Below are positions 21,239-62,712 of a stretch of 64,000 bases of DNA, one piece after another. The DNA is taken from the NCBI GenBank assembly GCA_001179505.1, contig CDMY01000303.1:1-64000 (forward strand), in the 5' to 3' direction. The notes under the pieces were generated by a model, which was not told the origin of the DNA, searched no databases, and saw only the letters and a program-made list of their open reading frames with translations. The translations under genes were made by a program, and so were the position numbers. This stretch comes from Vitrella brassicaformis CCMP3155 (lineage: Eukaryota; Protista; Chromerida). Every line of letters starts with the position of its first letter. Position 1 is the stretch's first letter.

Positions 21239-23178
21239 TCATGGGCTGCGGCGCTGGAACGTGAGAGACCCCATACTAAACTCCGTGTCGAATCCCTCTG
21301 GCGCTTCGGGTCGGAAACGGTGCTGCATCTTGCTGGCGAGACCGCCGCTCGGGAAGCACTTGGTCACATTTTTGACGCCCTGCAACGAACGAACCAAACG
21401 GACAGAGTGGCACATGAGAGCATCCTTCGTTCTGCTGCTCGGCCGACGTACCTTGAGTTGTGTGCACGACGTGAGGATGGCGATGGCATTGCAGAGGACC
21501 GCGCCACACTCGCCGTCATCCACCTCACCTGAACGTGACACACACACACACAGATCCCGCCAAATACCCATCAACTCAGGCAGGCCCCATCGTGCACCTC
21601 TGTGCACACATACCATAAACAGTGAATCGGACCATCCACATGGACAGCATATCGGCCGCACGCCGCCCCAGCTGCCACCCACTGAGCTCCGCAGCACTCG
21701 ACACCGCTGCCGCCGACAGGTGCACCTGGAGCGATATGATCTTCTCGGTCGACTTGACGGCAGTCAGGAAGTCCACCACACCGACAGCGGATGTCAACGG
21801 CGATGAAAAACTGCCCACGATGAGTTGCCATCCAACCCGCATCGCGATGACGGAGGCGATGCTGGCGGCTGCCGCGCGCTTCTCTGCCGTCGCGAGGGCG
21901 CCCGCTGCGACCTCGATCGCGCGGGCGCTGGGGATTGTGTCGCTGGTGATGGTCGCTGCCGTCCCCTCATCCCCCGATACCACCACTATGATCGCCCCGT
22001 TGGCTAGGTAGTTGACGATGTAGCGCACCCAGGGGCAGCGGTTACTGTGTGCCCAGGTCACCAGCCCAGCAGCGATGGAACCGGAAACGTGACGGCAGCG
22101 GGGAATGGGCTCCTTCAGGGCATCAGCATCCACCACGTCAGCTCTGAATGAATGCCACACACAGCACCAGACACATCCGCCAGTTCACTGTCCTCTTTGA
22201 TCCCCCCGCTGTCGTGCTTACGTGAGCTCTGCCAGTTCCTGGATCCTATTGCGGTCTCTGACCATCTGGTGATACTCGTGCCAGCTCGGGTCTCGCGGCG
22301 GGAAGATGTGCAGCGAGCTGAAGTCGAGCGTGCCCTTGGCCCCCCGCGCCACCAGTGTCTCGCGCAGCCGGCAGATGGCGTCAGCATCGGCCGACCACAG
22401 CTCGACGCCCCTGAGGAACCGCAGACTGGAGAGGGGCTTGCCGTCCTCCGGCAGGACGCGCAGAACCTCCTCAGTCGCCCTCACCGACAGACCCCCCATC
22501 CCCTTAAGCCCCTTGCAGCCCTTGACCCACTCCTTGGCTGCCTCTGTGTCCACCTGCCCCTCAAAGGTGATGGTGGCGAGGTTGGGCGTCAGCCACGAGC
22601 GGCCCGTACGGATGCGGGCGACCTCTCGCGGGACGGCAGTGACGGTCGTGAGAGCTGGGAGGTTGATGGTCTTGATGGGCGAGGGGGCCGGGAGGGGGCC
22701 AGGGGTGGGGGGAGGGACCGGGGAAATCGGCACACTCTCGAATGACAGCTCCTCGAGGGTGCCGTCGTCACCGCTCTGTGTCGAGATGGCCACGCCGCCG
22801 CTCGCCTCCTTCTCCGCCGACTGATGCTGCTGCTGCTGCTGCTTCGCCGCCAACGCCGCCCGCCCGTCCGCATGTCCCTCAGTCACGGCGACCCAATGTC
22901 CTGACAGAACGCATCCACGATAGCACAGAAAGGTGAGTGAGGCCTGCACTTCTGCTGCACTGGTGGGTGCGTAGACTTACCCAGACCCCAGCCAGGGCGG
23001 TCGAATGGCGCGCGGACCCTCAAACGATTCAAATGCGTCATCCGCTGGCCCCACTTGTGTGCGGTGGCCAGTGGCATGGCCGCCCACATCTGACGCGCCG
23101 TCTCGTCCTTGCAGTCGATGACCAGGTGGGTGTAGTTGGCGGCCGACTGGTGGAAGAGGGCCTTGCCGAGGTGCCGTC
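21239..23178 (-). CDS. F-box-like/LRR-like family protein, copy B (5' part lost in the gap)
   Basis: Paralogous exons: HLGKALFHQSAANYTHLVIDCKDE, WVAVTEGHADGRAALAAK...NLATITFEGQ, ADVVDADALKEPIPRCR and RFRPEAPEGFDTEF. Confidence 0.7.
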
Positions 23179-23478
23179 NNNNNNNNNNNNNNNNNNNNNN
23201 NNNNNNNNNNNNNNNNNNNNNNNNNNNNNNNNNNNNNNNNNNNNNNNNNNNNNNNNNNNNNNNNNNNNNNNNNNNNNNNNNNNNNNNNNNNNNNNNNNNN
23301 NNNNNNNNNNNNNNNNNNNNNNNNNNNNNNNNNNNNNNNNNNNNNNNNNNNNNNNNNNNNNNNNNNNNNNNNNNNNNNNNNNNNNNNNNNNNNNNNNNNN
23401 NNNNNNNNNNNNNNNNNNNNNNNNNNNNNNNNNNNNNNNNNNNNNNNNNNNNNNNNNNNNNNNNNNNNNNNNNNNNNN
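23179..23478. other. Assembly gap (300 N placeholder) inside the tandem array
   Basis: Run of N whose two flanks are overlapping parts of different paralogs, so it probably hides several kb. Confidence 0.95.
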
Positions 23479-25595
23479 CCCATCCCCAGCTCCTTAAGCC
23501 CCTTGCAGCCCTTGACCCACTCCTTGGCTGCCTCTGTGTCCACCTCTCTCTCAAAGGTGAGGGTGGAGAGGTTGGGCGTCAGCCACGAGCGGCCCGTACG
23601 GATGCGGGCGACCTCTCGCGGGACGGCAGTGACGGTCGTGAGAGCCGGGAAACTGATGGTCTTGATGGGCGAGGGGGCCAGGAGGGGGCCAGGGGTGGGG
23701 GGAGGGGTCGGCAAGATCAGCACACTCTCGAATGACAGCTCCTCCAAGGTGCCGTCGTCACCGCTCTGCGTCGAGATGGCCACGCCGCCGCTCGCCTCCC
23801 TCTCCGCCGACTGATGCTGCTGCTGCTGCTGCTTCGCCGCGAGCGCCGCCCGCCCGTCGGCATGGCCCTCAGTGACGGCGACCAAATGTCCTGACAGAAC
23901 GCATCCACGATAGCACAGAAAGGTGAGTGAGGCATGCACTTCTGCTGCACTGGTGGGTGCGTAGACTTACCCAGACCCCAGCCAGGGCGGTCGAATGGCG
24001 CGCGGACCCTCAAACGATTCAAATGCGTCATCCGCTGGCCCCACTTGTGTGCGGTGGCCAGTGGCATGGCCGCCCACATCTGACGCGCCGTCTCGTCCTT
24101 GCAGTCGATGACCAGGTGGGTGTAGTTGGCGGCCGACTGGTGGAAGAGGGCCTTGCCGAGGTGCCGTCGGAGGCGGGCCAGCTCCCATGGCTGCAGGTGG
24201 GCGAACACGTTGGCCAGCTCCTCACGAGAGAGACGGCGACAGGCCTGAGATGCCAAGAGAGAGGGCATCAGCACGTCATGGATCAGTAACAAATGCTGTG
24301 TGGTGGATGGATGGATGGATGGGGTATTTGTCTGTGTTTGTCTTACCGGCTCATGGTTGACGGACGGCTTTCGCCCACTCTTGCTAACCAAACAGTAGGA
24401 TGGGCCAGCAGCAGCAGCCTGATTGATATCAACCATCCCACGTGAGACCAGTCATCGCCAATAATGCGCGAGCCCTCTCTTTGTGTGTACCTTTGTTGGC
24501 TTTGCTGCAGGTGCTGCGGCAGATGGTTTGGACCCACGCGACGACTTGACCTTTTTGCATGGCAGGATGCTCTCGACCTTATCCCTCCCGCCGCCCGCCG
24601 TCTCGCCCTTGCCCTTCTTGTCCGCCCGCCGGGCTTCTTAACCGAAGACTTGGACTGAAGATAGAGAAGACCAACAGAGAGAAATGGAGTCTGATAGATT
24701 GGCTCCCTGTGTTTGTGCTGTGTTGTGTTGTGCTGTGCTGACCTGCTCGGTGTCGTTGAGTGTGTGTTCCATGGCGTCGAGTGTGCGGAAATGCTTGCCG
24801 GCGTCGGCGCACACCGTGCTCGACAAGACGCGGTACTGACGGTCAACCTCCTGAACAACACACACACACACACACACGGACGTGGATGGAGAGAGGAAAG
24901 TGCGTTAGTGTGTGTGGTGTCGCTGTCACTCACGCTAATGCGCTCTTGCTGTTCCCGCGATTGGGGCTCGGGGGCGGCCTTGATCAACTCATCCACCCTA
25001 CGAAACTGATGGCATCAACACACAACACCACGTCATGTGTGCAGGAGTTCATCGAGGTGCGCCTCCACCTTGGCAAGAAGCTTAACCAAAGCGTCCTCCG
25101 GATCGACCTCAGCGACATCCTGAATGACCCACACAGCCAGGACAACACCACACAGAAATGCAACCAACACCTATTCGCGGCCCTCTGCGCCCCTCAGACA
25201 CCCACCTCCATCTCCTCGACGTCACCGCCGCGGCCGCTACGCCCGCCAAGCCGACCCCCACCGGCAGATGCAGATCCAGATGCCGACGCCGGGGCTCGAC
25301 GACCAGACGCAGACGGGGCACCTGAAAGAATGATTGAACGGATGGGAACACACAATCCATAGGATCGGACCCACTCGTTGTTTCGGCTGGGCGTGTCATG
25401 GGTATTGGTACCTTCGCCTTCTTCCGCTTTAGCAGAGACTTTGGCACCGACTTGGTTGCGATCTCTACTTTGCGTTCCTTCTTCTCGGGGTGCTGGGGTG
25501 CGTCCTCGGCCTCCTTCTGCTGCTTCTGCTTCTGCTTCTGCTCCGCCGGCCGAGAGAGCGGTCGACCGGTGGCAAATGGTGGCAGGTTCTCCATC
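23479..25595 (-). CDS. F-box-like/LRR-like family protein, copy C (3' part lost in the gap)
   Basis: Exons: MENLPPFATGRPLSRPAEQK..., DVAEVDPEDALVKLL, ACRRLSREELANVFAHLQPWEL and LVAVTEGHADG...WVKGCKGLKELGM. Confidence 0.7.
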
Positions 25596-39225: not shown

Positions 39226-41609
39226 TCACACTTTGCTGTCAGGCGATGTCGACTTGTGGGCGTTCATGGCGATCGCCTCGTCGATCTGCTCCTGCACAAC
39301 ACAACACAACACAACACAACACAACAGACTCTTAAAGCTGTCCCCACATGGGTGCGATGACTGCAGTCAGTGTGGCGCATAGCACCTGAGTGGCCTGTGC
39401 TTCCTGAAGCTTCTCCTCCATCTGTGGGTCGGGGTGCTGCAGAGCCACACACACACACACACACACATACACACAGAGCCGTGTTGGCTGGGCGATTGCT
39501 GGCCACTCATCGATGACTGACTGGTCGTTCGTTCGTTAAGTGATCTACCTACCTGGTCGAGCCACTCAGGGTATGGGATGTCCTTGGCGGAGAGGAACTC
39601 GGGATTGTACTGCTTGTTGGCGTAACGGAACCCTGGTTGGTTGATGAGAGACAGACAGACAGATGGGCACATCCATGGCCAATGTGTGTGTGTGTGTTGA
39701 CTAAGGTGTGTGCCGACCGACGGACGGAGGGACGTACCGGTGTCGCAGAGCACCGTGGCAATCCGCTTGTTGGGCCCCAGCTTCTCGGCTAACCTGCACA
39801 CACACACACACACACACACATTCCTGCAGCTGGACTGACTAACCCATACAGACACACACAGACCGTGTCTGTGGTGCAGACAGACCTGATGGCGGCCGCC
39901 ACATTAACGCCAGATGAGAAACCCATCGGCAGACCCTCCTGCATGAGGGAAGGACACACTTTCTTTCTTGCGCCTGTGTGTGTATGTCAGTCAGTTCGGC
40001 TCTCTAATGCGCTCGTGGCTCAATCGCTGACCGCTTCGAGCAGCTGGAAGGCCATGGGGACCGACTCATAGTCGGGGATCTCGAAGGAGAAGTCCGGACG
40101 GAAGCCCTCCAGATTGGCCGTTACGCGACCCTGACCTGCTCGTATACATCAGTAAGTACCGTCATCAGTAACGACGCCCCACAACAGACACACCCGTCCC
40201 GTGTGTGCGCAGTCGGTCACTTCCACCATTCATTCTCGCGCAGCGTACCAATATTCTCGGTGATGGAGCTGCCCTCGGCCCTCGCCTCGCCCTGAATGAA
40301 CCACAACACACACAACAGAACAGGAGCACTCACACACAACAGGTTGTGCTTGTGCGTGTGTGTAGGTGTGTTGTGTGCGTGTCGAACGGTAGTGTACCGT
40401 GGTGTAGTATCTGTGTAGGACCGCGCCGGGGACGTCAGCGAGGCAGATCTTGACGCGTGGGTTTTTCTCCTTCAGATACATCCCCACCCCCGCCAGAGTG
40501 CCCCCCGTGCCAACAGACGACACGAACGCGTCCACACGACCCTCCATCTGCTCCCTGAGCAATCCATGCCACATCACACCACACCACACCACAGCAGAGG
40601 AGAGCAGACAGAATCTTTGGGTGTGTGTCGGCGGACGATTTGGCAGCATACCCACCCACCATATCTCTGGCCCGGTGGTCTCGTAGTGCGCCCTCCTGTT
40701 GGCCACGTTGTCGAACTGGTTGGCCCAGAAGCCGCCAATCCTCTCAGCCAAACGACCTGCAGAAAAGGGCGAATGCCAACACACAAAGACATTCAGGAAG
40801 GTACACTCACTCACTACACGTCACGTGGATACAGCTGTGTGTGTAGTGAGTGCATGAGATGAGTGTACACACCTGATAATTTGACAAAGTGGTTGGGGTG
40901 CCAGACCTTCTGTGGAGGGACCTCGACGAGCTGAACGCCGAGCTGTCGGAGGAGATCCTTCTTCTGGGGGCTCTGCGTGTTGGGGATGACACAGACGGTC
41001 TTGTAGAGGCGCGTGAAGCCCATGAGTGCCAGGCCGATGGCCGTGTTGCCCGCCGACCCCTCGACGACCGTGTCGACGCCCACGGTCTTGCCCAGCAGCC
41101 CCCGCTCCTCACCGTCGCGGATGATGTACACGGCCGGCCGGTCCTTGACCGACCCGCCAGGGTTGGCATACTCGCACTTGCCGTAGATCTGGCAGCCGCT
41201 GATCAGTGACGCAGTGTTCAGCCGAACCAGCGGCGTGTTGCCGACCAGGCTGGCAAAGTCAGCAAACACGTTGTCCTTGATAATCCGCCTGGGCGTGTAT
41301 TCCGGCGGCCCCATCTGGCCCCGCCACTCGGACTCCCGGCGGGTGTGATGACGGACGGCAAAGCAGCGGGCCTGCATGCGGTGGCCACTGTGCGTGGTTG
41401 CACGGCGAGGAGGGGTGCCGAGAGATGAAGGGGTGGTGCCCGATGGGTGATGCAGCAGACATGAGGCGCCGCGAGAACCAGATCTGCACAGACACACACA
41501 CACACACACACACATGAGTAGATCAGCAGATGACGCAATCATTGAGAGCACGGTGTTTTCGTTGTTTGTTTTCTTGAACCGATATCCCTCGAGAAAGTCA
41601 CCTCATCAT
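39226..41609 (-). CDS. cysK: Cysteine synthase A-like PLP enzyme (O-acetylserine sulfhydrylase family)
   Basis: [24 protein letters not shown] (PLP lysine), [65 protein letters not shown] and [22 protein letters not shown]. About 70-aa Arg/Ser-rich N-terminal extension. Confidence 0.93.
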
Positions 41610-47373: not shown

Positions 47374-47675
47374 TGCTGCGCTGAGGCGTCGTCAGAGGGG
47401 CTACGCTATCTATTGCTACGCTATGGCGGACGGCCTCGCCGTCATCTCATCAGTGACTGACTGACACCCGCTGCTGTCCAGTGGGGAAAAACAGGCATAC
47501 AGGCACAGGAAGCATCCATGCGAGCTCAACAAAGAGGGCAAGCTCCAATGGCAAGCTCAGAGAAGGGGAGAGGTCGGTCCGTTAGTTGGACAATGCGTTG
47601 AAGAGATCCAGTCCAGTAGGAAGCATCTGCAACGATCCATCCATCCATCCATCCGGCCATCCATCCATCCAGCTC

Positions 47676-50600
47676 ATGTCGAACCGTTCCGATGGGCAGC
47701 CTGAGCCTGAGGAGCCTCAGGCGATGGACGTGGACGTGGACCCCAGCGAGGCGGCTGCCAGTGGTGCGGCTGCTGCTGCCCCGCCGCCGTGCCGAAAGTC
47801 GCAGCGGGTCATCAAGAAGAAGGCTCCGGTAGACGACGAGGAGGACGAGGCGCCCCTGGCGAAGCGCAAGAAGCGCGACAACAAGAAGGAGAAGCCGAAG
47901 GCCAAGTCTGCGGCTCAGACTCAGAGTGCGGGAGGCACTAAGAAGGGCAACAATGGAGGGGCGGCTGGTGGTGCTGCAGCTGCAGGGGGTAGGAAGGGCA
48001 AGCAGGTCAGGCTTGGGGAGGGGGAAGGGGATGAGGATGAGGAGGACGAGGAGGAGGAGCAGATGAATGACGATGACTATGACCTCTGCTGCCTCGTCTG
48101 CGGACAGGTCGGGAGGGAGGGAGGGAGGGAGAGGGAGGGGGGGATGCAGATCAGTTCTGTTCGTTGGCTGCGCATGGTTGTGTGGTTGTGTGGTTGTCTG
48201 TGTTGTGTGCGCAGGGCGGCAATTTCGTGTGTTGCTACGCATGCCCCCGCGTGTACCACCTCGAGTGCATCGGACACAACCGGTCGGTCGGTATGCGGAC
48301 AAAACCACACCACACCACACCCCCACAGATCAACGCGTCTTCCTGTCCTCCTCCCTCCCTCCTTGTCTTGTCTTCTGTTCCACTGGACCATATGGACCAT
48401 GCCATGCAGTGCCTCCCGGGAGCGTGACTGGCTGTGCGGGTGGTGTGACGGCTCCGACTACTCCCCATCCAGCAACAAGCGCCAACACCACCAGCAGCAG
48501 CACAAGAACAAGGCCAGCCCCACACAGCCACCACCAGAACCGGCCATCGGTCTCCCACCGCCCCCTCCCCCAAATCAGGCCAGCGCCGCGGCTGCGGCTG
48601 CGGCTGTTTCGAGCTCCAGCAGCTCGTGTGCCGCCGCCAATGTGGCCATGGGCGCCACAGCCACAGGCGGGGAGGGGGCTGCCGAGGGAGAGCCGGGGGA
48701 TCAGAAACAGGTGTGGCTGGCATGTCCCACGGCACGGACTCGATCTCATCTCACTCATCACTGTGCGCGTTTGTGTAGGCTGTGGCTGGGGCGGGTGGGT
48801 TGGCGGATTGTGAGATGGCCGAGGGTAGCGAGGAGCCATGTGTGCAGGGAGGAGAGGGTAGTGGTAAGCGTAGCAGCAAGGGCGGGGCCGTTGCCAGGGA
48901 GGGCAGCGAGGAGGGTAGCGATGAGATGGATGACGCGGACATGATGGTCGCCACGCAGAAGGCTGTGACCGATATCAAAGGGGGCAGCGAGGAGGGTAGC
49001 GATGAGATGGATGACGCGGACATGATGGTCGCCACGCAGAAGGCTGTGACCGATATCAAAGGGGGCAGCGAGGAGGGTAGCGATGAGATGGATGACGCGG
49101 ACATGATGGTCGCCACGCAGAAGGCTGTGACCGATATCAAAGGTGGGCGGTGGGCGGAGGGCGGTGGGGGAGGGGACACATGGGACACATTCTTGACGTT
49201 ATCGACGTCCGTCAGGCAAGTGTTTGGGCGGTGGGTTTCTGTCCAACCACTTCTTGGTCCACCTGGGCTCCAAGCTCGAGTACATCGACAGACTCCTCAA
49301 GGTCAGGTCACTCACTGACTGACTCAACCAACCAACCAACCACACAACCACCACACCACACCCACGAAAAACCCCTGTGTTGTGTTGATGAACGAACATG
49401 GATGTGATGTGTCTGTGCAGTTGTGCGTTCGGATGGGTGTGCACGCCGACGCCGCCGATGACGTCTTTGGCAAAGACGAATTCGGTGTCAACAGGTGCCT
49501 CAGGGACCGACTCAACAATCTCGCGTACGCTCACACACACAGAAGGGAAACTCACTCGCTCGCCGTTCTGTTAAAACTTTGTCAAATGAATGCCTGGACG
49601 GATGGACGGATGGATGGATGTGTTGTGTTGTGTTGTGTTGTGACGTTCCTTTTGTGTGCAGGCTTGAGCGCATCTTGCCGGCGGTTGTGTCGTCCTCTCC
49701 CTCGCAGGCCTGTCTGGACTTCCACCAGGACGGCTGGACCACCGTCGACGAGGCACTCACTGAGGATGAGGTAAGTTAGTAAGGTGCGGAGGGTGGGGAC
49801 ACACCACACCACACGTGTGTCTGTCTGTGTGTGTGTGTGCAGGTGAATGAGCTGCACGACTGTGTGGTGGACTCGTTCAACACGTACATGCGCGAGATCA
49901 ACAGCCGCGACAGACACCACGTACTCGAGCAAGGCGGCTTCGACGTCATCAAGAAACGGTCATGCCAAGTCATTGTCAGACCCATATCTATCTGTCTGGG
50001 TGGGTGCCTGCCTGCTCATGGGTTTGGTGTGTGCGCAGTGGGTACAACCGCTACGATTTGACGATCCCCAAGCTCAAGCAGCCTCAGTCGTTCCCCTGCC
50101 TGCACAGGACCGCCACCCGCGCGCCGCCCTGGCTGCCTCTCGTGGCTGAAATACTCAACACAGGTGCCTGTTGACCATCGAATGCACCACACACACATGC
50201 ATGTGTGTATGTATGTGTGTGTGTGTGCGTGTGTTGTCAGGTCGTGAGGACGGTCGTTGTGGTATGTCCCAGGTGGAGCTCAAGCACGTGGGCTGCATGC
50301 TCTCGCTGCCCAAGTCTGCCGACCAGGTACCATACCAACACACCTGCAGGCACCGAGATGGATGGCCTGGTGCCCGTGTGTACGCGCGTGTGTGTGTGTG
50401 TGTGTGTGTGTCTGCAGAGCATTCACACGGATGGCCCTCACCTCAGCGAGGAGGAGCACCTCAGGTGGGTGGGTGGGTGGGTGGATGGAGGGTGAATGGC
50501 TGCATCCGTCGGTTTGCTTGTGCGTGCGTGTGTGCAGGGCCCACTGCGTCAACGTGTTTGTGCCGCTGGAGGACATCACCAAGAGCATCGGACCCACAGG

Positions 50601-51307
50601 TGGGTGAGTGAGTCTGTCTACCCACCAGCCACTCCACTCACTGTACTGCCACACATGACATGCATCACTCGATCAGTCCCCCCTCTGTCTGCCTGTCTGC
50701 CTGTCTCCCTGTCTCCCTGCCTGTCTGCCTGTCATTGTGTTGTGCATTCATTCAGAGCTGCATCCCCGCTCGCAGTTTCTGTGGAGCTACTGGGGCGGGC
50801 AGCTGGACGGGGCCGAGGACCACCTGGCACCAGTGACCCCCTGCCTAAACAAGGGCGCCGCCCTCCTCTTCGACTACAGACTCAAGTAACCCAAGCCAAC
50901 GGAGGGAGGGGAGGGCACTCACGTGCTGTGTCGTGTTGTGTGGGCCGCCGGGCGGATTGGCCATGAAAGGTGGTGTCTGTGTCTCTGTCTGTGTCTCTGT
51001 CTGTGTGCGTTGCGTTGCAGGCACCGTGGTCTGGCGAACAAGACGCAGCGTCTGCGGCCCGTCATCTACCTCACCTACAGACGAAAAGGGGTACTGTACC
51101 GGCATACAAGCACACACACACACACACACAACGAACAAGCAGCTCCGTGGAATGCTCTGTCTGTCTGTCTGTCTGTGTGCAACACCAAAGGACAACTGGC
51201 TGGACAAGGACAACTTCCACCGTGGGCGGTTCCCCAAGCTGCTCACACAGACCACCGCCGCGATGAAGGCGGAGAGCGAGAAAGCCGCAGACAGCAGACA
51301 CAACTAG
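47676..51307 (+). CDS. PHD finger fused to a phytanoyl-CoA dioxygenase (PhyH)-like 2OG/Fe(II) dioxygenase
   Basis: Spliced PHD: CCLVCGQGGNFVCCYACPRVYHLECIGHNRASRERDWLCGWC (C4HC3). C-terminal domain: FHQDGWTTVDEAL, RYDLTIP, SLPKSADQSIHTDGPH (HxD), CVNVFVPLEDI...GPT, GAALLFDYRLKHRGLANKT..RPVIYLTY. Confidence 0.8.
48901..49142 (+). repeat. Three perfect 81-bp coding tandem repeats (GSEEGSDEMDDADMMVATQKAVTDIKG)
   Basis: Units start at 48901, 48982 and 49063, are identical and in frame; the last ends at a splice donor. Confidence 0.95.
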
Positions 51308-52154
51308 ACGCAGACACACCGATGGGGAGACAGAGACGCCGACAGAGAGAGAGAGAGGGATGGTGGATAGCGGGGCGGAGGAGGGGGGGAGGGGATGGTC
51401 ACAGTGCTGTGAGATCATGGTGCCAGGTAGCTGGTCAACTGACCCTGTAGGTTAGACTCGCTCAATCGTATTTTTGGTCCCTTCCTGCGGGAATGCGGGA
51501 ATGCGTGAGTGGATGGTGCGTGAGACGGCTGCCGACGGACTCTTGCTTGACCGACAGCGTCCTACGGATGTTGGCAATTGGATGGATGGATGGATGGATG
51601 GATGGAGGCACAGCAGCCGTCACAACAGCCTTTTCACTCAATTCAATCATGCGCACACGCACACACACACACCCACACACACGCCCAACAGCCAGCCAAC
51701 TCGGTCAGTCCCAGACATGACACACACACACACAGAGCCACATGCACACGAACGAACGAACGCGTTTCTGTCGGTCGGTTGGTCACAAAACACTCCACTC
51801 ACTCACTCACGTCACTCCCATCCAGCGTGTTGTGTTTGATTGTGTGCGAGAGAGAGGATGAAGCCGGCAGGCAACCGATAGATAACCATAACAGCAAAGA
51901 CAGACAGGGGGCAAGCAAACGAGTGGGTGGGGAAAACCGAGAGGAGGGAGCCTAGGGCGAGTGGGACGGGACGGGGAGGGAGGGAGGGCAAGGAGGGGTG
52001 GCGCTGATGGGCAGGCACTTCTAGCATGCATTCGATTAGGCAGAAGAGCAACAATAGCAATACATACATCGCGGTCAGTCGGTCGGCCGGTCATGTCAAA
52101 ATCGCAGGCAGGAATGAGACACTGAGGTGAGGTGAAATGGGGTGGGAAGAGAGA

Positions 52155-55336: not shown

Positions 55337-58300
55337 GTGTGGTCAGTCAGAGTTGTTGGGAGTTTCTGTCTGTCTGCGTCAAGCAAGGTGTGCCACCACG
55401 TAACGTACCCACGAATTTGATATTGCCGAGCATCTGGTTCTTGTACTTGAAATAAGCCTCCGTGTAGTCGTCACCTGCAGGCACCGACACAACACAAACA
55501 CATGGCATGGAGAGGGCCCAGGGCCGTTTATGGTGAGTGAGTGAATGGATGGAGGTCTGGACAGGTAGGTGGGCGCGCGTGGGAGGGTACCAGTGAGGTC
55601 GTTGAGATTGTCAGGCGGCTTCAGGTACTTCTCAAACGACTCTTGACACCGATTCAACAGGATCCTGGGACGAACGACACACGCCCACACACACACACAC
55701 ACACACGCGAAACCACGTCCGGGGAAGAGAAGACACTTGCAAGAATGGATGCATGCATGAGTGCAGTGCACTGCCCACCTTCTGAACTCCTTGTCCTCTT
55801 CTGTGCCCTCCTTCTGTCCGTCGGCCTTGTCCCCCTTGTCCATGATGGCCTTCAGATCGTCCTTCAGACGCACACACAGCTGAGAATACATCTGATGGAG
55901 CGATGGATGACCCACACAGACAGACAGACAGACAGACAGAAGAAAGGGTGTGTGTGTGTGTGTGATGTGTTGTGTACCTCGATGAAGTGGTGCTGCGTGG
56001 TGGCCTTCTCAAAGACCATCCCCACGAGCGCCTCAATCTGATCGACAGACACAGACAGACATGACATGCATACGCACACACACACACACACACACGGGAC
56101 CTCCATTCCTTGCCGTCTCCTGACTCCCTCGCCGCCTCACTCACCTCAGAGTTTTGAGTGATTCCAGCGTCGAGTATCTGTTGGTAGAGCCGGTCGAACT
56201 TTTCGATCGTCAGCTTGTTCAGGATGCCCTTCAACGCACGCAACACCGCCTCAGACTCGTTCCTGCACAGACACACAGACAGACACACAGACAGACGGAA
56301 CGACGTCGTGTCACAGTATGCATGCTGTGTTGTGTGTTGTAGGTAAACTTACTGTTCAACCTTGGTCTTCTTCATCGAGGCGACCCATGAGTTCTCACCC
56401 ACCACCAGCTTATTGCGATCGCGGTCACGGTCACGGCCTGAAGAAGGCAGTGCAGAGGCAGGGAGGCGACAAGCGTGTCTCCTATCTATCTAGCGGCTCT
56501 TTCTCTCCCCCTACTCCCCCTCCCNNNNNNNNNNNNNNNNNNNNNNNNNNNNNNNNNNNNNNNNNNNNNNNNNNNNNNNNNNNNNNNNNNNNNNNNNNNN
56601 NNNNNNNNNNNNNNNNNNNNNNNNNNNNNNNNNNNNNNNNNNNNNNNNNNNNNNNNNNNNNNNNNNNNNNNNNNNNNNNNNNNNNNNNNNNNNNNNNNNN
56701 NNNNNNNNNNNNNNNNNNNNNNNNNNNNNNNNNNNNNNNNNNNNNNNNNNNNNNNNNNNNNNNNNNNNNNNNNNNNNNNNNNNNNNNNNNNNNNNNNNNN
56801 NNNNNNNNNNNNNNNNNNNNNNNNCTCCCCCTCCCCCCCCCCCCCCCCCCCCCCCCCCCCGTCTCTGGTGGGTGCTGACCTCCCCTCCAGCCGCTGTCGT
56901 CCTCACGAACATCGCGCCTGACAGACGAGACACGCAACAGAGACAGACGAGCATGGCGTCTGTAGGTCAAGTGGCCGCGGCACCTATGTTTGTTTTACTT
57001 ACCATTTGTCGCGGCTCCACTTGTCCGCATCATCACGATCACGGTCGCGCTGACCAGCCAAGCGAATCCATCACACACACACACAGACGCCACAGCCTCC
57101 GTCCGCCGTCCGTCGGTTGGTCCATCCAATAAGTGCATGTGCATGTGTGTGCTTACGTCGTCTCTCCGGCTGTCCCTGTCTGCCGCAGTGCTGTCCCGTG
57201 GCCTGCCCCCGGCCTGCTCCCGGACGTTCCTGAAGTCGACCTCCCTCTGGAAGGTCCCGAACTTGCCCGCACCACCCGGGAGGCGCGCTGCTGAGCCGCC
57301 TGGCCGGAAGATGCCCTTCCGGGAACCGCCCGCACGGTCGATCTCGCTGCTCTCGGTCGGCGCGGCCGAGTGGTCTGAAGGTGGATAAATGGATGGATGG
57401 ATGGATGGATGGATAGGTGGGTGGGAGGCACTAGCTGTCATTCATTCGTTCGTTGTGATTGTGTACCCTTGAGCAGGTAGGGAGGGATGTTGTGGTTGTC
57501 TGGCAGCCTCTGGCAGTACTCCTGAGGCAGGCAGATCAGAACACACATACACAGCTCAATGAGATAGATGTGCACACCACACAGGCATGCAATCAATGCA
57601 TTCAGTCACTGCACTCACCCACTGCAGACATACGTGTGATGTCTATCTGTCTGTGTTTCTGTCTTCGGCACGGAGCGGAGGGACATACATACCTTGTCTT
57701 TGAAGGACTTGAGGAAGTCGATGGGGTAGAACCGCGGGCCACTCCCACTCGCCAGACTCGCGTAACGCGACGACGGAGATGCCTCGGGGGGAGCACTGCA
57801 GAGAGAACAGCAAACATACGAACGAACGAACGTGTATGTGATGTGCATTCCTTTCCCTGTGTATGTGATGTGCATTCCTTTCCCTAAGTCCGCGTCCACC
57901 ACCCATGCCATGCCGTGTACTGTGCTCACATGGCGGGCGCCCCCATGGCGTCGTAGATGTCGTCCGGCGGCAGTCCCGGGCTCATGACATCGCTGGTGCT
58001 GGGCCCGCCGACAGAGCTGCTCCTGTACACCCCCGACGGCTGATCCGAGTCCGTCTGCTCCTCCTCAGCCTCATCCAGCTCGCCCGCATCCTCACGGTCG
58101 CCCTCCACACCCTCGTCCATCGCCGCCTCGGGAGCACCTGGGTGGGCCGCGGCGGGCACTGGCGCGGCGGGTACTGGGGGCTGGGGCGGAAGGGGAGGGG
58201 GAGGGGGAGAGGGAGAGGGTGCAGACGGCGTCTCCTCCGTCTTGTCGGCGGCCGCTGGGCTGACCGCGCTGGCCTTGACCTCATCTGAAGCGGGGATGGG

Positions 58301-61300
58301 CTCCTCGTCTCGGGCCGGCTTTTCCTTGGGCGGCTCCTCAACCACGGGCGGCGCCTCCTTGGCCGCCCCCTGCGACTCTGCTGCGATGGTGTCCTGCTTG
58401 ACAGGCGCCAGGGGCTCCTCCTTGACCGCCTCAATCACGGCTTCGTCCACCTTTGTCTCGCCCGCCGGTGTCTCGCGCTCGGCTGGCGCGGCCTCAGCCT
58501 CCGCAGCAGGAGGTGCAGCCGGCTCGTCTGAGGGCTCACCCTGCACGTCGACCAGACCGGCTGTGGCGTCCCCGGCTGATTCCTCCACTTCAGGAGCAGC
58601 AGATGGCTGCTCCTGCTCATTGACAGCCGCTGCAGCAGCCGAGTCGCCCTTCTCCTGATCAGCAGCAGCAGCAGCGGCGCCCTCGCCCTCAGGAAGGTTG
58701 TCCTTGGGAAGTGTCGTTGCCTCAGCCTCGGCTTCGGGAGCTGTCTGCGGCGGCTCCAGCCTGGCCTCATCCTCCTTTGCCGCTGGCACAGGCTTGGTCA
58801 CGGCTGGAGGCTCCGGCGCTGCGGACTTCTCGGCGGTCTTGGGCTCGCCCACTACTGACGCCCATGACTTGGCTCCTGTGGCTGCGGGAGACTTCTCGGG
58901 GGCAGCCGCCTTGGCCACGGGCGGCACGGGGGGCGCAACTCTTTTTTCCTTGGCAGCAGCAGCAGCAGCAGCAGCAGCAGGGCCAGCAGCCAGCGGCTTG
59001 CTGGTGGTGCTGTCGGTCTTCCGGCCCGCAGCGTCATCAGCCGCCATGGAAGGCTCCTTCTTCGGACCAACTGGCTTCTCTGCCGCCGCGATGGTGGGTG
59101 CCGCCTGTTGCTGCGGCTGGGGTGGCTGGGGTCTCCTGTCGCCTCCAGCGGGCACCGGGCCGACGGGCATGCCCCTGCCCCTCCCGATGGCCGAGGTGCT
59201 AGGGCTGACCCTCGGCTTGGCGGCGGCCGGCGAGGGCTTCCTCTTGGCCATGTCGGCCCAGCTGGGTGTCTTGCTCTCGCTCGGAGATGACGCCGGTGAG
59301 GGCTCTGCTGGCGCAGGGGTTTGTGGAGCGGGGGGCTGTGTCTGTCGAAGGGCGAGGGCTGAGGGAGATGGGGACGCAGAGGGAGGGGACGGCGCAGATG
59401 CCTCAGAGGACGGCGCCGAGGGCGGCTTGGCAGGGGCGGATGGCGCACCAGCAGCCACGGCAGCCGAAGCCGGGGCAGGAGCGGTTGGCTCCTTTGGCTC
59501 CTTCGCCGCCACCGTCGGTGCTGGTGCTGGCGCTGGTGCTGCTGGTGCTGATTCCTGCCCATTGCGTTGGTCGGCCGCTGGTGCCTTGCGCGCCTTGCCG
59601 TCCTTGTCCTTCCGCTCGTCACCGCCCGTCTTGTCCTTGTCCTTCTCCTTAGCGGCGGTGTCCAAGGCAGCGGCCTCCGCGGACGATGCCGACTTGGGGG
59701 ACGATGCCGCCGCACCGGTTACACCACCCTCCCCTGGCCTGGGCTTCCTGCCCTTGTCTCTGTCCTTGTCCTGATCCTCTCCGCCCTTGCCGCCCTTGGC
59801 CTTGCTGCTGTCCTGCACGTCGTTGCCCGCCGATGCGGCCGCAGCTGGCTGCTGGGGCTGCTGTGTTGGCGGTGGGTGGTAGGGGATGACGGGAGGATGC
59901 GAGACGGGCGTGGTCTGTCCGCTGGTCTCCTTGGGTGAGCTGGCAGGGGGCGAGGGAGAGGCTGCAGCGGTGCCTCGTCCCATGCCCCGTGGGGCCGGTC
60001 CCATCTTGGGCCCTGCGGTGGTGCCCTTGGCTTGTGCGGGTGTGAACTGCTTGGGGGGGCCGGCCTTGGGTGCGGGAGCCTTGGCCGTGTTCTTCTTGAG
60101 ACGGTCAGCCCATGACAATGGACCTGTCAGACAGACAGACAGACAGACGAAGAGACATGAGGGTGTCCTTGATTGCTCTCTTTGTCTGTCTGTCTGGTGT
60201 CATTGCGTACCCTGTTTCTCGGGCTCAGGTTGTGGCGGAGGGTCCTTGGGCGCCTCTGCGGTCTCAGCGGGCTTGCTCACGCTCGGTGCCGCCTCCTTGC
60301 GTGCCTCCGGGGCAGGTGTCGCTGTGGCAGCTCCCCGCTTGGAGGCCTCAGCAGGAGCAGCCGATGGTGAGGGAGACTTGTCTTTCTCCTCTGGAGGGGC
60401 CCCAGCGACACCCCTCCCCCCCTCCTCCTTCTCGCCCTTGACAGCCTCCTCCTTTGCCGTGCTGCCGGTGGCGCCTTCACGAGGCTTGCCCCCATCCTCC
60501 TTGGCCCCCTCCCGCTGACTCTCGGTCTTGCCGCTCGGTGCTGGTGTTTTTTCTTTCGGCGGCGGGTCAGCCACACCGTTCCCTCTCCGCCGGTCGGGCT
60601 GTCCCTCGTGTGTCTGCTGGGCGATGGCCCCCTCGTCCTGACCCTGATTGTGGCCCTCCCCGCGGCTGTCTGTCTTCTTCTGCGGCTGTGGGGGGTCCTT
60701 GGTCTTCCTCTCGACCGCCTCGCCCTCGCTGCTGCCGTCCTTGAGTGAGCAGGGGGCGGTGCCGGTGTCGCTGGTGCTGCCCGAGAGGGGCGGGACGGCC
60801 TCGCCCCGGATGATGGACGGGAAGGCCGACGCGTTGGTGGGTGAGAAGGGCTGGGCGCTCGGGTTGAGGGCCGCACCGCCTGTGGTGCCGGCCGACGAAG
60901 GTGTGGGGGCGCCGCTGGGGGCGGCAGCCTTGCCGAGGATCTTGACCTGGCCGTGCACCTTCTTGTCGAGATCCCGCTGCAGCGTATCAGCATAGCTCCG
61001 ACCTGCACACATCAAACCCATCACATGCATACATCGCCACAGTCATATCTCCCTCCCTCCCTCCGTCCCTCCCTCCCCAGCCACGCACCTGTTGCGGGCG
61101 TGTTGGGCGCGCTGGCAGGTGGGGGAGGAGGGGGTGGGGGCGGGGGGTGAGCCTTGGCCGCCGGGGCTGGGGAGCTCTCGACGGAGGGAACGACACTCAT
61201 GTTCGGCGTCCCAGTGGCGGGGGATGACGCCAACGGATGGTGGTGGCTCTGCCCGCCTGAGAAACTGTTGTTGCGGATGCCCCGACCACGCCCACCTAAC

Positions 61301-62712
61301 ATGACATGACATGACACCAAACAAGCGGCAACACCTTTCTGCAAGTCACTTGATGGTGGGTGAAATTGGTGGTCGCTCACCGTTCCTCCTCTCCCTCCCG
61401 CCCCTGTTAGCCCCTCCGCCTCCGGGATATCGAGGGCCGCCGCCACCGCCCGGGTGCTGCGGCGGCGGCTGGTAGGGGGGAAATGTCTGCTGCTGATGTT
61501 GGTGCTGGTGCTGGTGCTGGTGTGAGGGTGAGCTGTGTGTGAGGTGATAGGGGCTGGCCCCGCTGCTGTTGACGTTGGCGGGCTGAGGATAGGCGTACGC
61601 CTGGCCGTGGGCGGGGGGATACTCCTGTCCACTCGGGTACTGACCGCCCTGCCCAGCTCGGCCGAAACCACCTGCACACATACAAACATACATACGCAAA
61701 GTTCCATCCCTCCCTCCTATCACCGGCGTCTGCCTTGGTGAGTGTGTTGATCGACGGCTCACTTGCGTCTTGCTGCTGGTACATGGGCTGCATCGGGTAT
61801 GGCGCAGGGTAGCCCCGGTGTCCATTTGCGGCCGCCCCGTTGGCGCCATACTGCGCCACCGCCTGCGCCACCGCCGGGGGCGGGGGCTGGTTGATGAGGT
61901 AGTCGGGGTGGCTGGCGGCCTGCCATGTCGAAGGCATGGTGCCCGACATGGGAAACGGGGTACCCAGGAGGGATGGCGGGCTGCCGACGGGACGGAAGGG
62001 CCCCTGTTGGGGTGGGTTGAGGGGCAGGGACGACATGCCGCCATACGACGCAGCGCCCCCATACACGTCTGACAGACAGACACGAAAACGGGCGGAGGGC
62101 AAGGTGAGGTGCGGTCAGGGGAGGGACATACTCAGTGAGTGCTTCCTCCACGTGTGTGTGTGTGTGAGTGTCTGTGCGTCAATCGTGTGGTGTCATGTCG
62201 CTCACTGGTTTGGTTGCCGTATCGGGGGTTGTTCATGCCGCTCATGTCGTTGGCCTTGCCCTGCATCAGGAATTGCATCGCACACCGACAAAACAAACGA
62301 AGGAACAGCATGTGGGTGGCGTGGCACAGATCAGAGCGTCTGGTCGCTTCAGTGAGTGAGCTGAGCTGAGATAGATGTATGTGGTCACTCACTCTCCCTC
62401 CCTCCCTCCCGCCGGGCCCACCTGGTTGTATGCGTTGGGTGCCACGGGTGCGTATGGCGCGTATCCGCCCTCGCTGCCCATGCCCTCCACTGAACCTCCA
62501 GTAGTGGCAACTCGGGGATCACTCGCCCCAGGCTACAACAGACAGACAAGACAGACCGACAGAGGGAAGCAGTCGTCAGCGGTTAACCGTGGCTTCTTGT
62601 GCTGGCTGTTCCTCCGTCCGTCCTGCCAGCTTACAGGGAAGAATTCCGGTGCCGTGGCACTGAGCGTTTTGCCTGAGCTCTTGCCTCCAAAACTGTCGCC
62701 TGAGCCACTCAT
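52490..62712 (-). CDS. EIF4G: Eukaryotic translation initiation factor 4G (long disordered N-terminus, MIF4G and MA3 domains)
   Basis: MIF4G: LRALKGILNKLTIEKFDRL, MVFEKATTQHHFIEMYSQLC, ILLNRCQESFE, MLGNIKFVG, ECVCTFLTTIG and IRVRCLMKDVLDLRANGW. MA3-like: KAKDYIKEY and YLDDLLLDLPKL. 4E-site-like RFYPIDFLKSF. In-frame GT-AG junctions traced from ATG 62712 through the 730-aa exon; one gap interrupts the gene. Confidence 0.88.
56525..56824. other. Assembly gap (300 N) beside a poly-C/poly-Gly tract in eIF4G
   Basis: Run of N followed by a C homopolymer of about 29 nt. Confidence 0.97.
57832..57885. repeat. 27-bp direct duplication in an eIF4G intron
   Basis: GTGTATGTGATGTGCATTCCTTTCCCT twice in tandem. 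Confidence 0.9.

What the first reader, a model, noticed from the sequence alone, without database searches (positions are those of the whole stretch)
47676..51307. PHD finger fused to a PhyH-family 2OG/Fe(II) dioxygenase: candidate new chromatin-targeted oxygenase
Seen: one spliced reading frame with a basic NLS-like N-terminus (KRKKRDNKKEK), an acidic stretch, a complete C4HC3 PHD finger and a C-terminal PhyH-like domain. That domain keeps the HxD (IHTDG), distal His (KHRG) and 2OG-binding Arg (RPVIY) positions. Established: PHD fingers commonly read histone H3 tails, and the well-known chromatin 2OG oxygenases are JmjC, TET/JBP and AlkB types, while PhyH enzymes are mostly small-molecule hydroxylases. 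Inference: this may be a nuclear histone or nucleic-acid hydroxylase/demethylase from an unexpected branch of the superfamily. I do not recall this architecture, but cannot exclude that it is known.
Basis: partly seen in the sequence, partly recalled or inferred. Interest (0 to 1): 0.72.

Follow-up and report, generated by a model that had tools for sequence, protein, structure and literature searches.

The report
Chromatin-linked PhyH oxygenase with PHD finger
A real 15-exon gene of the alga-like protist Vitrella joins a histone-tail-reading PHD finger to an intact iron/2-oxoglutarate oxygenase of a type otherwise known from small-molecule chemistry. Its relatives in many protist lineages carry PHD, chromo, MBD or HMG-box modules, which points to an unstudied family of chromatin-directed oxygenases.

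Summary
Window 47676-51307 (+) holds one 15-exon, all GT-AG gene encoding 738 aa. My model is identical to the public prediction CEM00963.1 / A0A0G4ET12 of Vitrella brassicaformis CCMP3155. The protein has basic NLS-like clusters and an acidic tract. It has a C4HC3 PHD finger (closest solved: CHD4 PHD1, TRIM33/24, AIRE, BHC80) and a disordered linker with a 3x27-aa repeat. Its C-terminal PhyH domain keeps H600-x-D602, H678 and R689. The closest solved relative is kanamycin B dioxygenase KanJ. There is no JmjC, TET or AlkB signal. The new result is comparative. The catalytic domain defines a large subfamily (979 cluster representatives at E<=1e-30). About 60% of its long eukaryotic members carry chromatin or DNA modules upstream: PHD, chromo, MBD, MBT/Tudor-knot, and a divergent HMG-box in 43 of 99. 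PHD+PhyH occurs in single intron-free ORFs or single transcripts in Thecamonas, Telonema, Paulinella, trypanosomatids and marine picoeukaryotes. I found no functional study. Best reading: an active 2OG oxygenase recruited to chromatin, substrate unknown. It is a new variant of a known kind. It is not unique to Vitrella, but it is uncharacterised.

The parts
47676..51307 (+). Whole coding region of the PHD-PhyH gene (738 aa). Exons: 47676-48107, 48215-48282, 48410-48710, 48779-49142, 49216-49301, 49421-49524, 49662-49770, 49843-49958, 50039-50163, 50241-50326, 50418-50464, 50538-50599, 50756-50885, 51021-51090, 51191-51307.
   Evidence: Manual splicing gives GT-AG at all 14 introns. The product is identical to public protein P0060 = CEM00963.1 / A0A0G4ET12. 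GC3 is 0.73-0.87 in every exon.
47805..47903 (+). Basic, NLS-like clusters: RVIKKKA (aa 44-50) and AKRKKRDNKKEKPKAK (aa 62-76).
   Evidence: Read directly from the translation. The nuclear-import role is an inference.
48015..48083 (+). Acidic tract GEGEGDEDEEDEEEEQMNDDDYD (aa 114-136) directly before the PHD finger.
   Evidence: Translation.
48090..48446 (+). PHD finger, aa 139-179, C4HC3 (C139, C142, C151, C154, H159, C162, C176, C179). It spans exons 1-3 and is interrupted by introns 48108-48214 and 48283-48409.
   Evidence: Pfam PHD E 1.6e-4, 22.0 bits against a cut-off of 24. phmmer against PDB: CHD4 PHD1 E 5.8e-8, then TRIM33, ZMYND8, AIRE PHD1, TRIM24 and PHF21A.
48901..49148 (+). 81-nt x 3 tandem repeat, 99% identical and in frame (27-aa unit GGSEEGSDEMDDADMMVATQKAVTDIK, aa 308-388), inside the acidic low-complexity linker (exons 3-4, aa 180-388).
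   Evidence: Tandem Repeats Finder score 487; translation.
49720..51060 (+). PhyH-type 2OG/Fe(II) dioxygenase domain, aa 472-690 (exons 7-14).
   Evidence: Pfam PF05721, 38 bits, E 2.8e-9. AF2 model pLDDT 81, pTM 0.81. Foldseek top hits are KanJ, DhiD/8zyb, AndA and TlxIJ, probability 1.0. The profile against PDB gives KanJ at E 3.5e-25.
50424..50432 (+). Codons of the H600-T-D602 iron-binding HxD motif (IHTDG).
   Evidence: These align to the HxD of KanJ. They are invariant in 14-, 68- and 31-sequence alignments.
51022..51024 (+). Codon of the distal iron-binding His678 (KHRG).
   Evidence: It aligns to the KanJ distal His and is invariant.
51055..51057 (+). Codon of Arg689 (RPVIY), the predicted 2-oxoglutarate C5-carboxylate ligand.
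   Evidence: It aligns to the Arg of KanJ 'RPLLAMT'. It is invariant and nearly invariant.
49957..50057 (+). Subfamily-specific invariant motif R527-x3-R531-Y-D533 (KKRGYNRYD). It spans intron 8 and lies upstream of the jelly-roll core.
   Evidence: Invariant. It is not covered by the KanJ match. Its role is unknown.

Best explanation
This is one gene of Vitrella brassicaformis encoding a nuclear, catalytically competent Fe(II)/2-oxoglutarate oxygenase that is brought to chromatin by its own PHD finger. Shown: the gene structure, the PHD and PhyH domains, the intact H600/D602/H678 iron triad and R689, a KanJ-like PhyH fold, and membership of a large subfamily. In that subfamily the eukaryotic members repeatedly carry chromatin or DNA-binding modules upstream of the catalytic domain. 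Inferred: the basic clusters import the protein into the nucleus. The PHD finger resembles the CHD4/AIRE/TRIM24/BHC80 class, which reads the H3 N-terminal tail unmodified at K4, and is inferred to dock on a histone tail. A roughly 290-residue acidic, repeat-containing flexible linker then lets the C-terminal domain reach a nearby substrate. There the domain would use O2 and 2OG to oxidise a C-H bond. The most likely substrate class is a histone or other chromatin-protein side chain, either by hydroxylation or by oxidation of a carbon next to nitrogen, which removes a methyl or amino group. The latter matches the chemistry of the nearest solved relative KanJ, an oxidative deaminase. A DNA base is the second possibility.
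For: Gene model. Domains: PhyH above the Pfam cut-off, and the PHD finger matches solved PHD fingers at E 6e-8 to 1e-5. Catalytic residues align to KanJ and are invariant in three alignments. Fold: AF2 pLDDT 81, Foldseek probability 1.0 to PhyH-type enzymes, and the profile gives KanJ at E 3.5e-25, ten orders of magnitude better than the next hit. Subfamily size: 979 representatives at E<=1e-30. Fusions among the 99 long top representatives: PHD in 12, Chromo in 5, MBD in 1, MBT in 1, Tudor-knot in 1 and Pfam HMG_box in 3. Individual architectures are MBD+Chromo+PhyH, HMG+2xPHD+PhyH, 2xChromo+PhyH and Chromo+PHD+PhyH. A conserved N-terminal segment in 43 of the 99 gives a profile that hits almost only HMG-box structures: NHP6A at E 2.4e-4, with 19 of 20 hits being HMG boxes. 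The same PHD-like finger plus PhyH order is found in Thecamonas, Telonema (one transcript), Paulinella, Trypanosoma/Leishmania and Tara Oceans picoeukaryote contigs.
Against: There is no experimental datum: no RNA, localisation, histone-binding or activity data for this or any member was found. Every solved relative acts on small molecules or free amino acids. Pfam PHD falls 2 bits short of its cut-off. The PHD finger has Tyr152 where AIRE-type fingers have an Asp that contacts H3R2 (own knowledge), so its ligand is uncertain. The net charge of the catalytic domains is near neutral and does not hint at a basic or acidic substrate. Stand-alone bacterial members exist, so the ancestral role was metabolic. 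Many short relatives are contig fragments whose N-termini are unknown.
Confidence: 0.6

Rival explanations
1. The enzyme acts on DNA, oxidising a base such as 5-methylcytosine, thymine or N6-methyladenine. The PHD, HMG or MBD modules place it on chromatin, and the catalytic domain modifies nucleic acid rather than protein.
For: The largest clade of long relatives carries one or two divergent HMG-box-like DNA-binding segments. One relative carries a methyl-CpG-binding domain at E 1.6e-10. Two invariant arginines (R527, R531) sit outside the core and could bind phosphate. That last point is inference.
Against: There is no sequence or fold similarity to AlkB or TET/JBP nucleic-acid oxygenases in the top matches. 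The window protein itself has only a PHD finger, a histone-directed module. HMG boxes and MBDs also occur in histone-modifying enzymes (own knowledge).
Confidence: 0.2
2. It is a metabolic, small-molecule or free-amino-acid oxygenase like other PhyH/KanJ-type enzymes. The zinc finger serves regulation, oligomerisation or another protein contact unrelated to chromatin.
For: All solved relatives are small-molecule or free-amino-acid enzymes. Bacterial stand-alone members lie among metabolic genes. The trypanosomatid orthologue was listed as a lateral-transfer candidate of prokaryotic origin (PMC4711719).
Against: This does not explain why the same catalytic subfamily independently acquired PHD, Chromo, MBD, MBT/Tudor-knot and HMG-box modules in about 60% of long eukaryotic members. 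It also does not explain the NLS-like clusters.
Confidence: 0.13
3. The catalytic domain is an inactive scaffold, like the degenerate PhyH protein MRB7260 of the trypanosome RNA-editing complex. The protein would then be only a chromatin reader or adaptor.
For: There is precedent for a non-catalytic PhyH domain in T. brucei (PMC5855954).
Against: MRB7260 lacks most iron and 2OG ligands. Here H600, D602, H678 and R689 are all present and invariant across the subfamily.
Confidence: 0.04
4. The reading frame is an annotation or reader artefact that joins two neighbouring genes: an upstream PHD gene and a downstream PhyH gene.
For: The joining exons 3-4 are low-complexity and repeat-rich, and long open frames are common in this GC-rich DNA. 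No transcript data were available.
Against: The largest gap between exons is 156 nt. All junctions are GT-AG and in phase. The linker exons have the same GC3 bias as the domain exons. An independent public model is identical. The PHD-then-PhyH order recurs in uninterrupted ORFs and in a single Telonema transcript.
Confidence: 0.03

Closest known systems
Kanamycin B dioxygenase KanJ (Streptomyces kanamyceticus; PDB 6s0r, 7cl2) and other PhyH-type tailoring oxygenases (DhiD/8zyb, AndA, FtmOx1, TlxIJ)
   Same: Same Pfam family (PF05721). Same HxD...H iron triad and C-terminal Arg. Same jelly-roll fold: Foldseek probability 1.0, TM 0.56-0.60. Best sequence relative with a structure: single sequence E 3e-6, subfamily profile E 3.5e-25.
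   Different: Only 18-20% identical. KanJ is a stand-alone bacterial enzyme acting on an aminoglycoside. It has no zinc finger, no NLS-like region and no R-x3-R-Y-D motif. The window protein is a 738-aa multidomain eukaryotic protein.
JmjC histone demethylases with PHD fingers (KDM5, KDM7/PHF8/PHF2, KDM4)
   Same: Same logic of architecture: a histone-tail reader (PHD, chromo or Tudor) on one chain with an Fe(II)/2OG oxygenase domain. This is the functional model for the proposed mechanism.
   Different: The catalytic domain belongs to a different family. There is no JmjC or Cupin_8 match in Pfam and none among the top 50 fold matches. The window protein is not a member.
Phytanoyl-CoA 2-hydroxylase PHYH and PHYHD1 (animals)
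   Same: They share the Pfam family name and the general PhyH fold (own knowledge).
   Different: Neither appears among PDB sequences matched by the subfamily profile at E<=0.01. They are peroxisomal or cytosolic single-domain enzymes acting on acyl-CoA. The name 'PhyH' says nothing about substrate here.
PHD fingers of CHD4 (PHD1/2), TRIM24/TRIM33, AIRE PHD1 and PHF21A/BHC80
   Same: Best matches of the window's finger, E 6e-8 to 6e-6, including the C-x2-C-(Q/D)GG-x-(L/V)-x-C-C-x2-C-P-R-x-(Y/F)-H core. This class reads H3 tails unmodified at K4 (own knowledge).
   Different: The window has Tyr152 in place of the Asp in 'CCDxC', and a shorter, Arg-rich loop before the last Cys pair. Ligand specificity was not tested.
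Uncharacterised orthologous group: Thecamonas AMSG_09122, Telonema and Paulinella transcripts, and trypanosomatid proteins (T. cruzi TCDM_04263, T. congolense TCIL3000_3_2150, Leishmania LPMP_290920; probably T. brucei Tb927.3.3440)
   Same: The same catalytic subfamily with a PHD or PHD-like finger upstream. All catalytic residues are kept.
   Different: 28-42% identity in the catalytic domain, with no close orthologue. The trypanosomatid forms are short (about 345 aa), lack a linker, and have a finger that scores as C1/PHD-variant. Several are mis-named 'ADP-ribosylation factor-like protein 3A'. None has been studied.

Membership tests
PhyH family of Fe(II)/2OG dioxygenases (Pfam PF05721) | Match to the family profile above the curated cut-off | tested here: met
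   38.0 bits against a cut-off of 22, E 2.8e-9, aa 472-690 covering profile positions 1-212 of 213.
PhyH family of Fe(II)/2OG dioxygenases (Pfam PF05721) | HxD/E...H iron-binding facial triad | tested here: met
   H600, D602 and H678 align to the KanJ triad. They are invariant.
PhyH family of Fe(II)/2OG dioxygenases (Pfam PF05721) | Basic residue binding the 2OG C5 carboxylate, about 10 residues after the distal His | tested here: met
   R689 aligns with the KanJ Arg and is invariant or nearly so.
PhyH family of Fe(II)/2OG dioxygenases (Pfam PF05721) | Double-stranded beta-helix fold of PhyH type | tested here: met
   AF2 pLDDT 81, pTM 0.81. Foldseek against PDB: 369 hits at E<=1e-3, and the top 50 are all PhyH-type enzymes with TM 0.47-0.60.
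PhyH family of Fe(II)/2OG dioxygenases (Pfam PF05721) | 2OG-dependent oxygenase activity | not testable with these tools
   Needs recombinant protein.
PHD finger (Pfam PF00628) | C4HC3 ligand pattern with canonical spacing | tested here: met
   C139-x2-C142-x8-C151-x2-C154-x4-H159-x2-C162-x13-C176-x2-C179.
PHD finger (Pfam PF00628) | Match to the family profile above the curated cut-off | tested here: inconclusive
   22.0 bits against a cut-off of 24, E 1.6e-4, full-length match 1-47 of 47. However, phmmer against solved PHD fingers gives E 5.8e-8 for CHD4 PHD1 and 30 further hits below 1e-3.
PHD finger (Pfam PF00628) | Binding of a histone tail | not testable with these tools
   Needs peptide arrays or ITC.
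JmjC histone demethylases/hydroxylases | JmjC/Cupin_8-type catalytic domain | tested here: not met
   No JmjC or Cupin_8 hit at E<=1 and none in the top 50 fold matches.
TET/JBP and AlkB nucleic-acid oxygenases | TET_JBP or 2OG-FeII_Oxy_2-type catalytic domain | tested here: not met
   No Pfam hit. None among the PDB sequence or fold matches listed.
Proposed chromatin-associated KanJ-like PhyH subfamily (no published name found) | Subfamily motifs R-x3-R-Y-D, Q-x2-H-x-D-G-x-H, NVFVPL, G-x-TE, FDYR-x-x-HRG-x-x-N and RP-x-x-Y | tested here: met
   All are present in the window protein and are invariant or nearly invariant across 14, 68 and 31 sequences. The window protein ranks 4th of 1.84 billion with 326 bits, but it was part of the query profile.
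Proposed chromatin-associated KanJ-like PhyH subfamily (no published name found) | Chromatin or DNA-binding module N-terminal to the catalytic domain | tested here: met
   The window has a PHD finger. Relatives have PHD, Chromo, MBD, MBT/Tudor-knot or HMG-box modules.

The most novel reading that the evidence does not exclude
The KanJ-like PhyH subfamily would be a fourth, so far unrecognised class of eukaryotic chromatin oxygenases beside JmjC, TET/JBP and AlkB. It would be ancient, being present in alveolates, rhizarians, telonemids, apusomonads, choanoflagellates and kinetoplastids, and apparently absent from the animal, fungal and plant models, which is an impression from the names returned and was not tested. 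It would catalyse a chromatin modification not made by the known classes, for example oxidative deamination or C-hydroxylation of a histone lysine, or oxidation of a DNA base.
Probability: 0.4. Interest if true: 0.85.

Novelty: new variant of a known kind. Interest (0 to 1): 0.68.

Why it matters
Every enzyme known to oxidise chromatin with O2 and 2-oxoglutarate belongs to the JmjC, TET/JBP or AlkB groups. Here a different branch of the superfamily, otherwise used for antibiotic and alkaloid tailoring, has been wired many times over to histone-mark readers and DNA binders across distant protist lineages. If it acts on chromatin it adds an eraser or writer class and perhaps a new histone or DNA modification. 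It would also link chromatin state to oxygen, iron and 2OG supply in organisms that lack much of the textbook machinery. These include trypanosomatids, where gene control is poorly understood and genetics is easy. The finding also corrects a propagated mis-annotation ('ADP-ribosylation factor-like protein 3A') in trypanosome records.

Tried and rejected
- **Two-gene artefact:** rejected.
- **Literature:** ten full-text searches and several paper and supplement look-ups found no study of a PHD-, chromo- or HMG-linked PhyH enzyme. The peptide-dioxygenase survey PMC2938197 mentions PhyH enzymes only in bacterial operons.
- **T. brucei PHD6:** I tested the idea that the kinetoplastid orthologue is PHD6 (Tb927.3.2350) of the promoter complex SPARC. 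There is no support. The words 'phytanoyl' and 'dioxygenase' do not occur for it in the papers or held supplements. The only catalytic-looking PhyH protein of T. brucei is Tb927.3.3440. I did not compare the sequences.
- **Net charge and pI of catalytic domains:** used as a hint to a basic (histone) or acidic (DNA) substrate. The result was near neutral and scattered, so it is uninformative.
- **Neighbour-joining tree of 219 catalytic domains:** the Vitrella protein has no close orthologue (at most 42% identity) and does not sit in a clean PHD clade, and reader types are scattered. The tree is too shallowly supported to count separate fusion events.
- **Simple regular expressions for chromo, HMG and MBD:** these missed most cases. 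They were replaced by phmmer with textbook HMG and MBD domains and by Pfam.
- **Gene neighbourhood of relatives:** uninformative in eukaryotes. A bacterial member lies among unrelated metabolic genes.
Full report
**Observation.** The region is eukaryotic, intron-rich DNA of about 58-60% GC. Starting from the ATG at 47676, I joined 15 exons through 14 GT-AG introns of 68-156 nt into a 2217-nt frame that ends with the stop at 51305-51307. The product has 738 aa. All exons, including the low-complexity ones that connect the two domains, share the same codon-position bias: GC3 is 0.73-0.87 and well above GC2. Eleven introns have lengths that are not multiples of three, and the other three contain in-frame stops, so none can be read through. 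A protein in the public 15-billion-sequence library (P0060) is identical to my model over all 738 residues. Its records are CEM00963.1 and UniProt A0A0G4ET12, 'PHD-type domain-containing protein', from Vitrella brassicaformis CCMP3155. I could not examine transcript data for Vitrella.

**Anatomy.**
- Residues 44-50 and 62-76 are lysine/arginine clusters (RVIKKKA, AKRKKRDNKKEKPKAK).
- Residues 114-136 are almost purely acidic.
- Residues 139-179 form a C4HC3 PHD finger that introns 1 and 2 cut into three pieces.
- Pfam scores the finger at 22.0 bits, 2 bits under its cut-off. A direct comparison with solved structures removes the doubt. CHD4 PHD1 matches at E 5.8e-8, followed by TRIM33, ZMYND8, AIRE PHD1, TRIM24, CHD5, TRIM66 and PHF21A/BHC80.
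- From my own knowledge, these fingers read the H3 tail unmodified at K4. The window's finger keeps the acidic residues before the first cysteine but has Tyr152 where that class often has Asp, so its ligand remains open.
- Residues 180-388 are low-complexity and include an in-frame 81-nt unit repeated three times at 99% identity.
- Residues 472-690 match Pfam PhyH over the whole profile, 38 bits against a cut-off of 22.

**Catalytic domain.** Against solved structures, the best single-sequence match is kanamycin B dioxygenase KanJ (E 3e-6). IHTDG aligns to the KanJ HxD, KHRG to its distal His, and RPVIY to its Arg. In alignments of 14, 68 and 31 relatives, H600, D602 and H678 are invariant, and R689 is invariant or nearly so. 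An AlphaFold model built on a 14-sequence alignment is confident, with pLDDT 81 and pTM 0.81. Its Foldseek matches in the PDB are all PhyH-type tailoring enzymes: KanJ, 8zyb/DhiD, AndA, TlxIJ, OkaE and SptF. They have probability 1.0 and TM 0.47-0.60 at 14-20% identity. A profile of the subfamily hits KanJ at E 3.5e-25, ten orders of magnitude better than the next structure. It does not reach human PHYH or PHYHD1 at E<=0.01. No JmjC, TET/JBP or AlkB signal appears anywhere. The domain is thus an intact 2OG oxygenase on a KanJ-like branch of the PhyH family.

**Relatives.**
- A word-indexed search with the C-terminal 350 aa gave 59 hits, the best at 41-43% identity.
- The sequences were already telling (weak Pfam support). 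A Tara Oceans protein (P0001, one uninterrupted ORF) and a Trypanosoma rangeli protein (P0011) both have a Cys/His finger upstream of the PhyH domain. P0007 has a chromo-barrel/MBT-like 'VHYEGW...DCWI' segment.
- An exhaustive HMMER profile search of 1.84 billion representatives found 11,474 proteins at E<=1e-3, 4,357 at E<=1e-10 and 979 at E<=1e-30. Many are 500-1150 aa long with the PhyH domain at the C-terminal end.
- I scanned the 99 longest of the top 150 against Pfam. All but one have PhyH. In addition, 12 have PHD (plus NSD-type PHD variants), 5 Chromo (best E 2.3e-29), 3 HMG_box, 1 MBD (1.6e-10), 1 MBT and 1 Tudor-knot.
- Individual architectures: MBD+Chromo+PhyH (P0078), HMG+2xPHD+PhyH (P0079, P0071), Chromo+PhyH (P0069), 2xChromo+PhyH (P0095), Chromo+PHD+PhyH (P0201), and PHD+PhyH (P0064, P0073, P0061, P0066).
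- The largest clade, with 400-790-residue N-terminal extensions, showed only recurrent sub-threshold HMG hits. I aligned its conserved segment. The resulting profile hit almost exclusively HMG-box structures: NHP6A at E 2.4e-4 over the full length, then WDHD1, HMGB3, PMS1, HMGB2, SSRP1, HMGB1 and UBF. Nineteen of the 20 hits were HMG boxes.
- An HMM of that segment finds one or two copies in 43 of the 99 long representatives. That count is partly circular, because 11 of them built the model.
- Taken together, roughly 60% of the long eukaryotic members carry a recognisable chromatin or DNA-binding module upstream of the same catalytic domain. The more distant Pelagomonas-type group (about 320 aa) and a bacterial member have none.

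**Distribution.** Named members are Thecamonas trahens AMSG_09122, Telonema subtile (a single Trinity transcript with PHD and PhyH), Paulinella chromatophora and two Salpingoeca species. More distant members come from Pelagomonas and Tetraparma. A well-conserved trypanosomatid group covers T. cruzi, T. rangeli, T. theileri, T. melophagium, T. grayi, T. conorhini, T. vivax, T. congolense, T. equiperdum and at least six Leishmania species. For L. tarentolae, the database itself records an NSD-type PHD variant plus PhyH. Several trypanosome records carry the wrong name 'ADP-ribosylation factor-like protein 3A'. One paper states that T. brucei has only two PhyH-domain proteins: the degenerate RNA-editing factor MRB7260 and Tb927.3.3440 (PMC5855954). 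The latter is probably the orthologue. Its number places it beside ARL3A, which is my recollection of the ARL3A gene number and was not checked, and that would explain the mis-name. It appears elsewhere only in a list of lateral-transfer candidates (PMC4711719). The Vitrella protein has no close orthologue, at most 42% identity in the catalytic domain. A stand-alone bacterial member lies among unrelated genes on a contig with ECF sigma, FecR and methylmalonyl-CoA mutase genes.

**Mechanism.** Shown: one gene, a PHD finger, an intact KanJ-like PhyH oxygenase domain, and a subfamily-wide association with chromatin and DNA modules. Inferred: nuclear import through the basic clusters, docking of the PHD finger on a histone tail, reach through a long acidic flexible linker, and oxidation of a nearby C-H bond using Fe(II), O2 and 2OG. 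I favour a chromatin-protein side chain as substrate, at about 45% of the total. The window protein and many relatives use histone-mark readers. In addition, the PhyH family already contains amino-acid hydroxylases and, in KanJ, an enzyme that oxidises a carbon next to an amine. That is the chemistry needed for demethylation or deamination of lysine. A DNA base is the main alternative, given the HMG-box and MBD fusions. A purely metabolic role, a dead scaffold and a mis-joined gene are less likely (see rivals). The invariant R527-x3-R531-Y-D533 motif outside the jelly-roll core is specific to the subfamily and remains unexplained.

**Comparison and novelty.** The protein is a member of the Pfam PhyH family and carries a PHD finger. 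It is not a JmjC, TET/JBP or AlkB enzyme. It works, by inference, like the PHD-JmjC demethylases (reader plus oxygenase on one chain) but with a catalytic domain from another family. Ten literature searches and targeted reading found no description of this architecture or subfamily. The library does not cover most subscription journals, so I cannot exclude a prior description. The architecture itself is visible in public databases under automatic names. I rate it a new variant of a known kind. It is interesting mainly because the comparative pattern is strong and the family is experimentally accessible in trypanosomatids and as recombinant protein.

**Limits.** There is no experimental evidence of any kind. 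Most relatives are metagenomic, many are truncated, and only 30 of the top 150 were looked up for names. The tree of catalytic domains is a quick neighbour-joining sketch. The HMG-box assignment of the large clade rests on E-values of 1e-4 to 1e-2, though the hits are consistent.

Noticed in passing
window 48901-49148: An 81-nt unit is repeated three times at 99% identity, in frame, inside exon 4 (27-aa acidic unit, aa 308-388). It is either a very recent expansion or an assembly collapse or expansion. Copy number may vary between strains.
   Followed up: partly
window 47635-47671 and 51579-51606; introns throughout 48108-51190: An (ATCC)9 microsatellite ends 5 nt before the start codon, and a (TGGA)7 lies downstream of the stop. 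Most introns are filled with GT/CA, CTGT and GGAT-type microsatellites.
   Followed up: no
window about 14100-16100 and 22200-24450 (- strand): A tandemly duplicated block holds near-identical ORF pairs ('MVDINQAAAAGPSYCLVSKSGRK...' and '...HASLTFLCYRGCVL...'). It is interrupted by runs of N (assembly gaps) near 14.9-15.3 kb and 23.0-23.5 kb. There is no Pfam match.
   Followed up: partly
window 55632-62100 (- strand): The stretch at 58-62 kb has GC 0.66-0.70 and AT skew of -0.27 to -0.31. A 730-aa Pro/Ala-rich ORF (57926-60118) lies beside an exon with a weak MIF4G match (55632-56288). This is probably an eIF4G-like gene with a long disordered N-terminus.
   Followed up: partly
window 40814-41551 (-) and 6107-6760 (-): There is an exon of a PLP-dependent cysteine synthase/CBS-like enzyme (PALP, E 4.5e-27) and an exon of an MFS transporter (E 1e-20).
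   Followed up: partly
relatives P0011, P0165, P0231, P0233, P0235, P0236 (trypanosome records): PHD-like finger + PhyH proteins are named 'ADP-ribosylation factor-like protein 3A' in several Trypanosoma genome records. This is a propagated mis-annotation, perhaps from the neighbouring ARL3A gene. The T. brucei counterpart is probably Tb927.3.3440.
   Followed up: partly
relatives P0015, P0017, P0056 (Pelagomonas-type group, about 320-350 aa): A more distant stand-alone PhyH group carries a conserved C-terminal segment of about 60 aa with weak similarity to the PFU ubiquitin-binding domain (E 0.004-0.02).
   Followed up: no
L001 1659-2924 (Tara Oceans scaffold carrying P0001): The gene next to the picoeukaryote PHD-PhyH gene, on the opposite strand, encodes a Cupin_8 (JmjC-related) protein. 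This may be coincidence.
   Followed up: no
window protein aa 527-533 (49957-50057) and all relatives: An invariant R-x3-R-Y-D motif lies upstream of the jelly-roll core and is not covered by the match to KanJ. It is a candidate substrate-binding element of unknown role.
   Followed up: no
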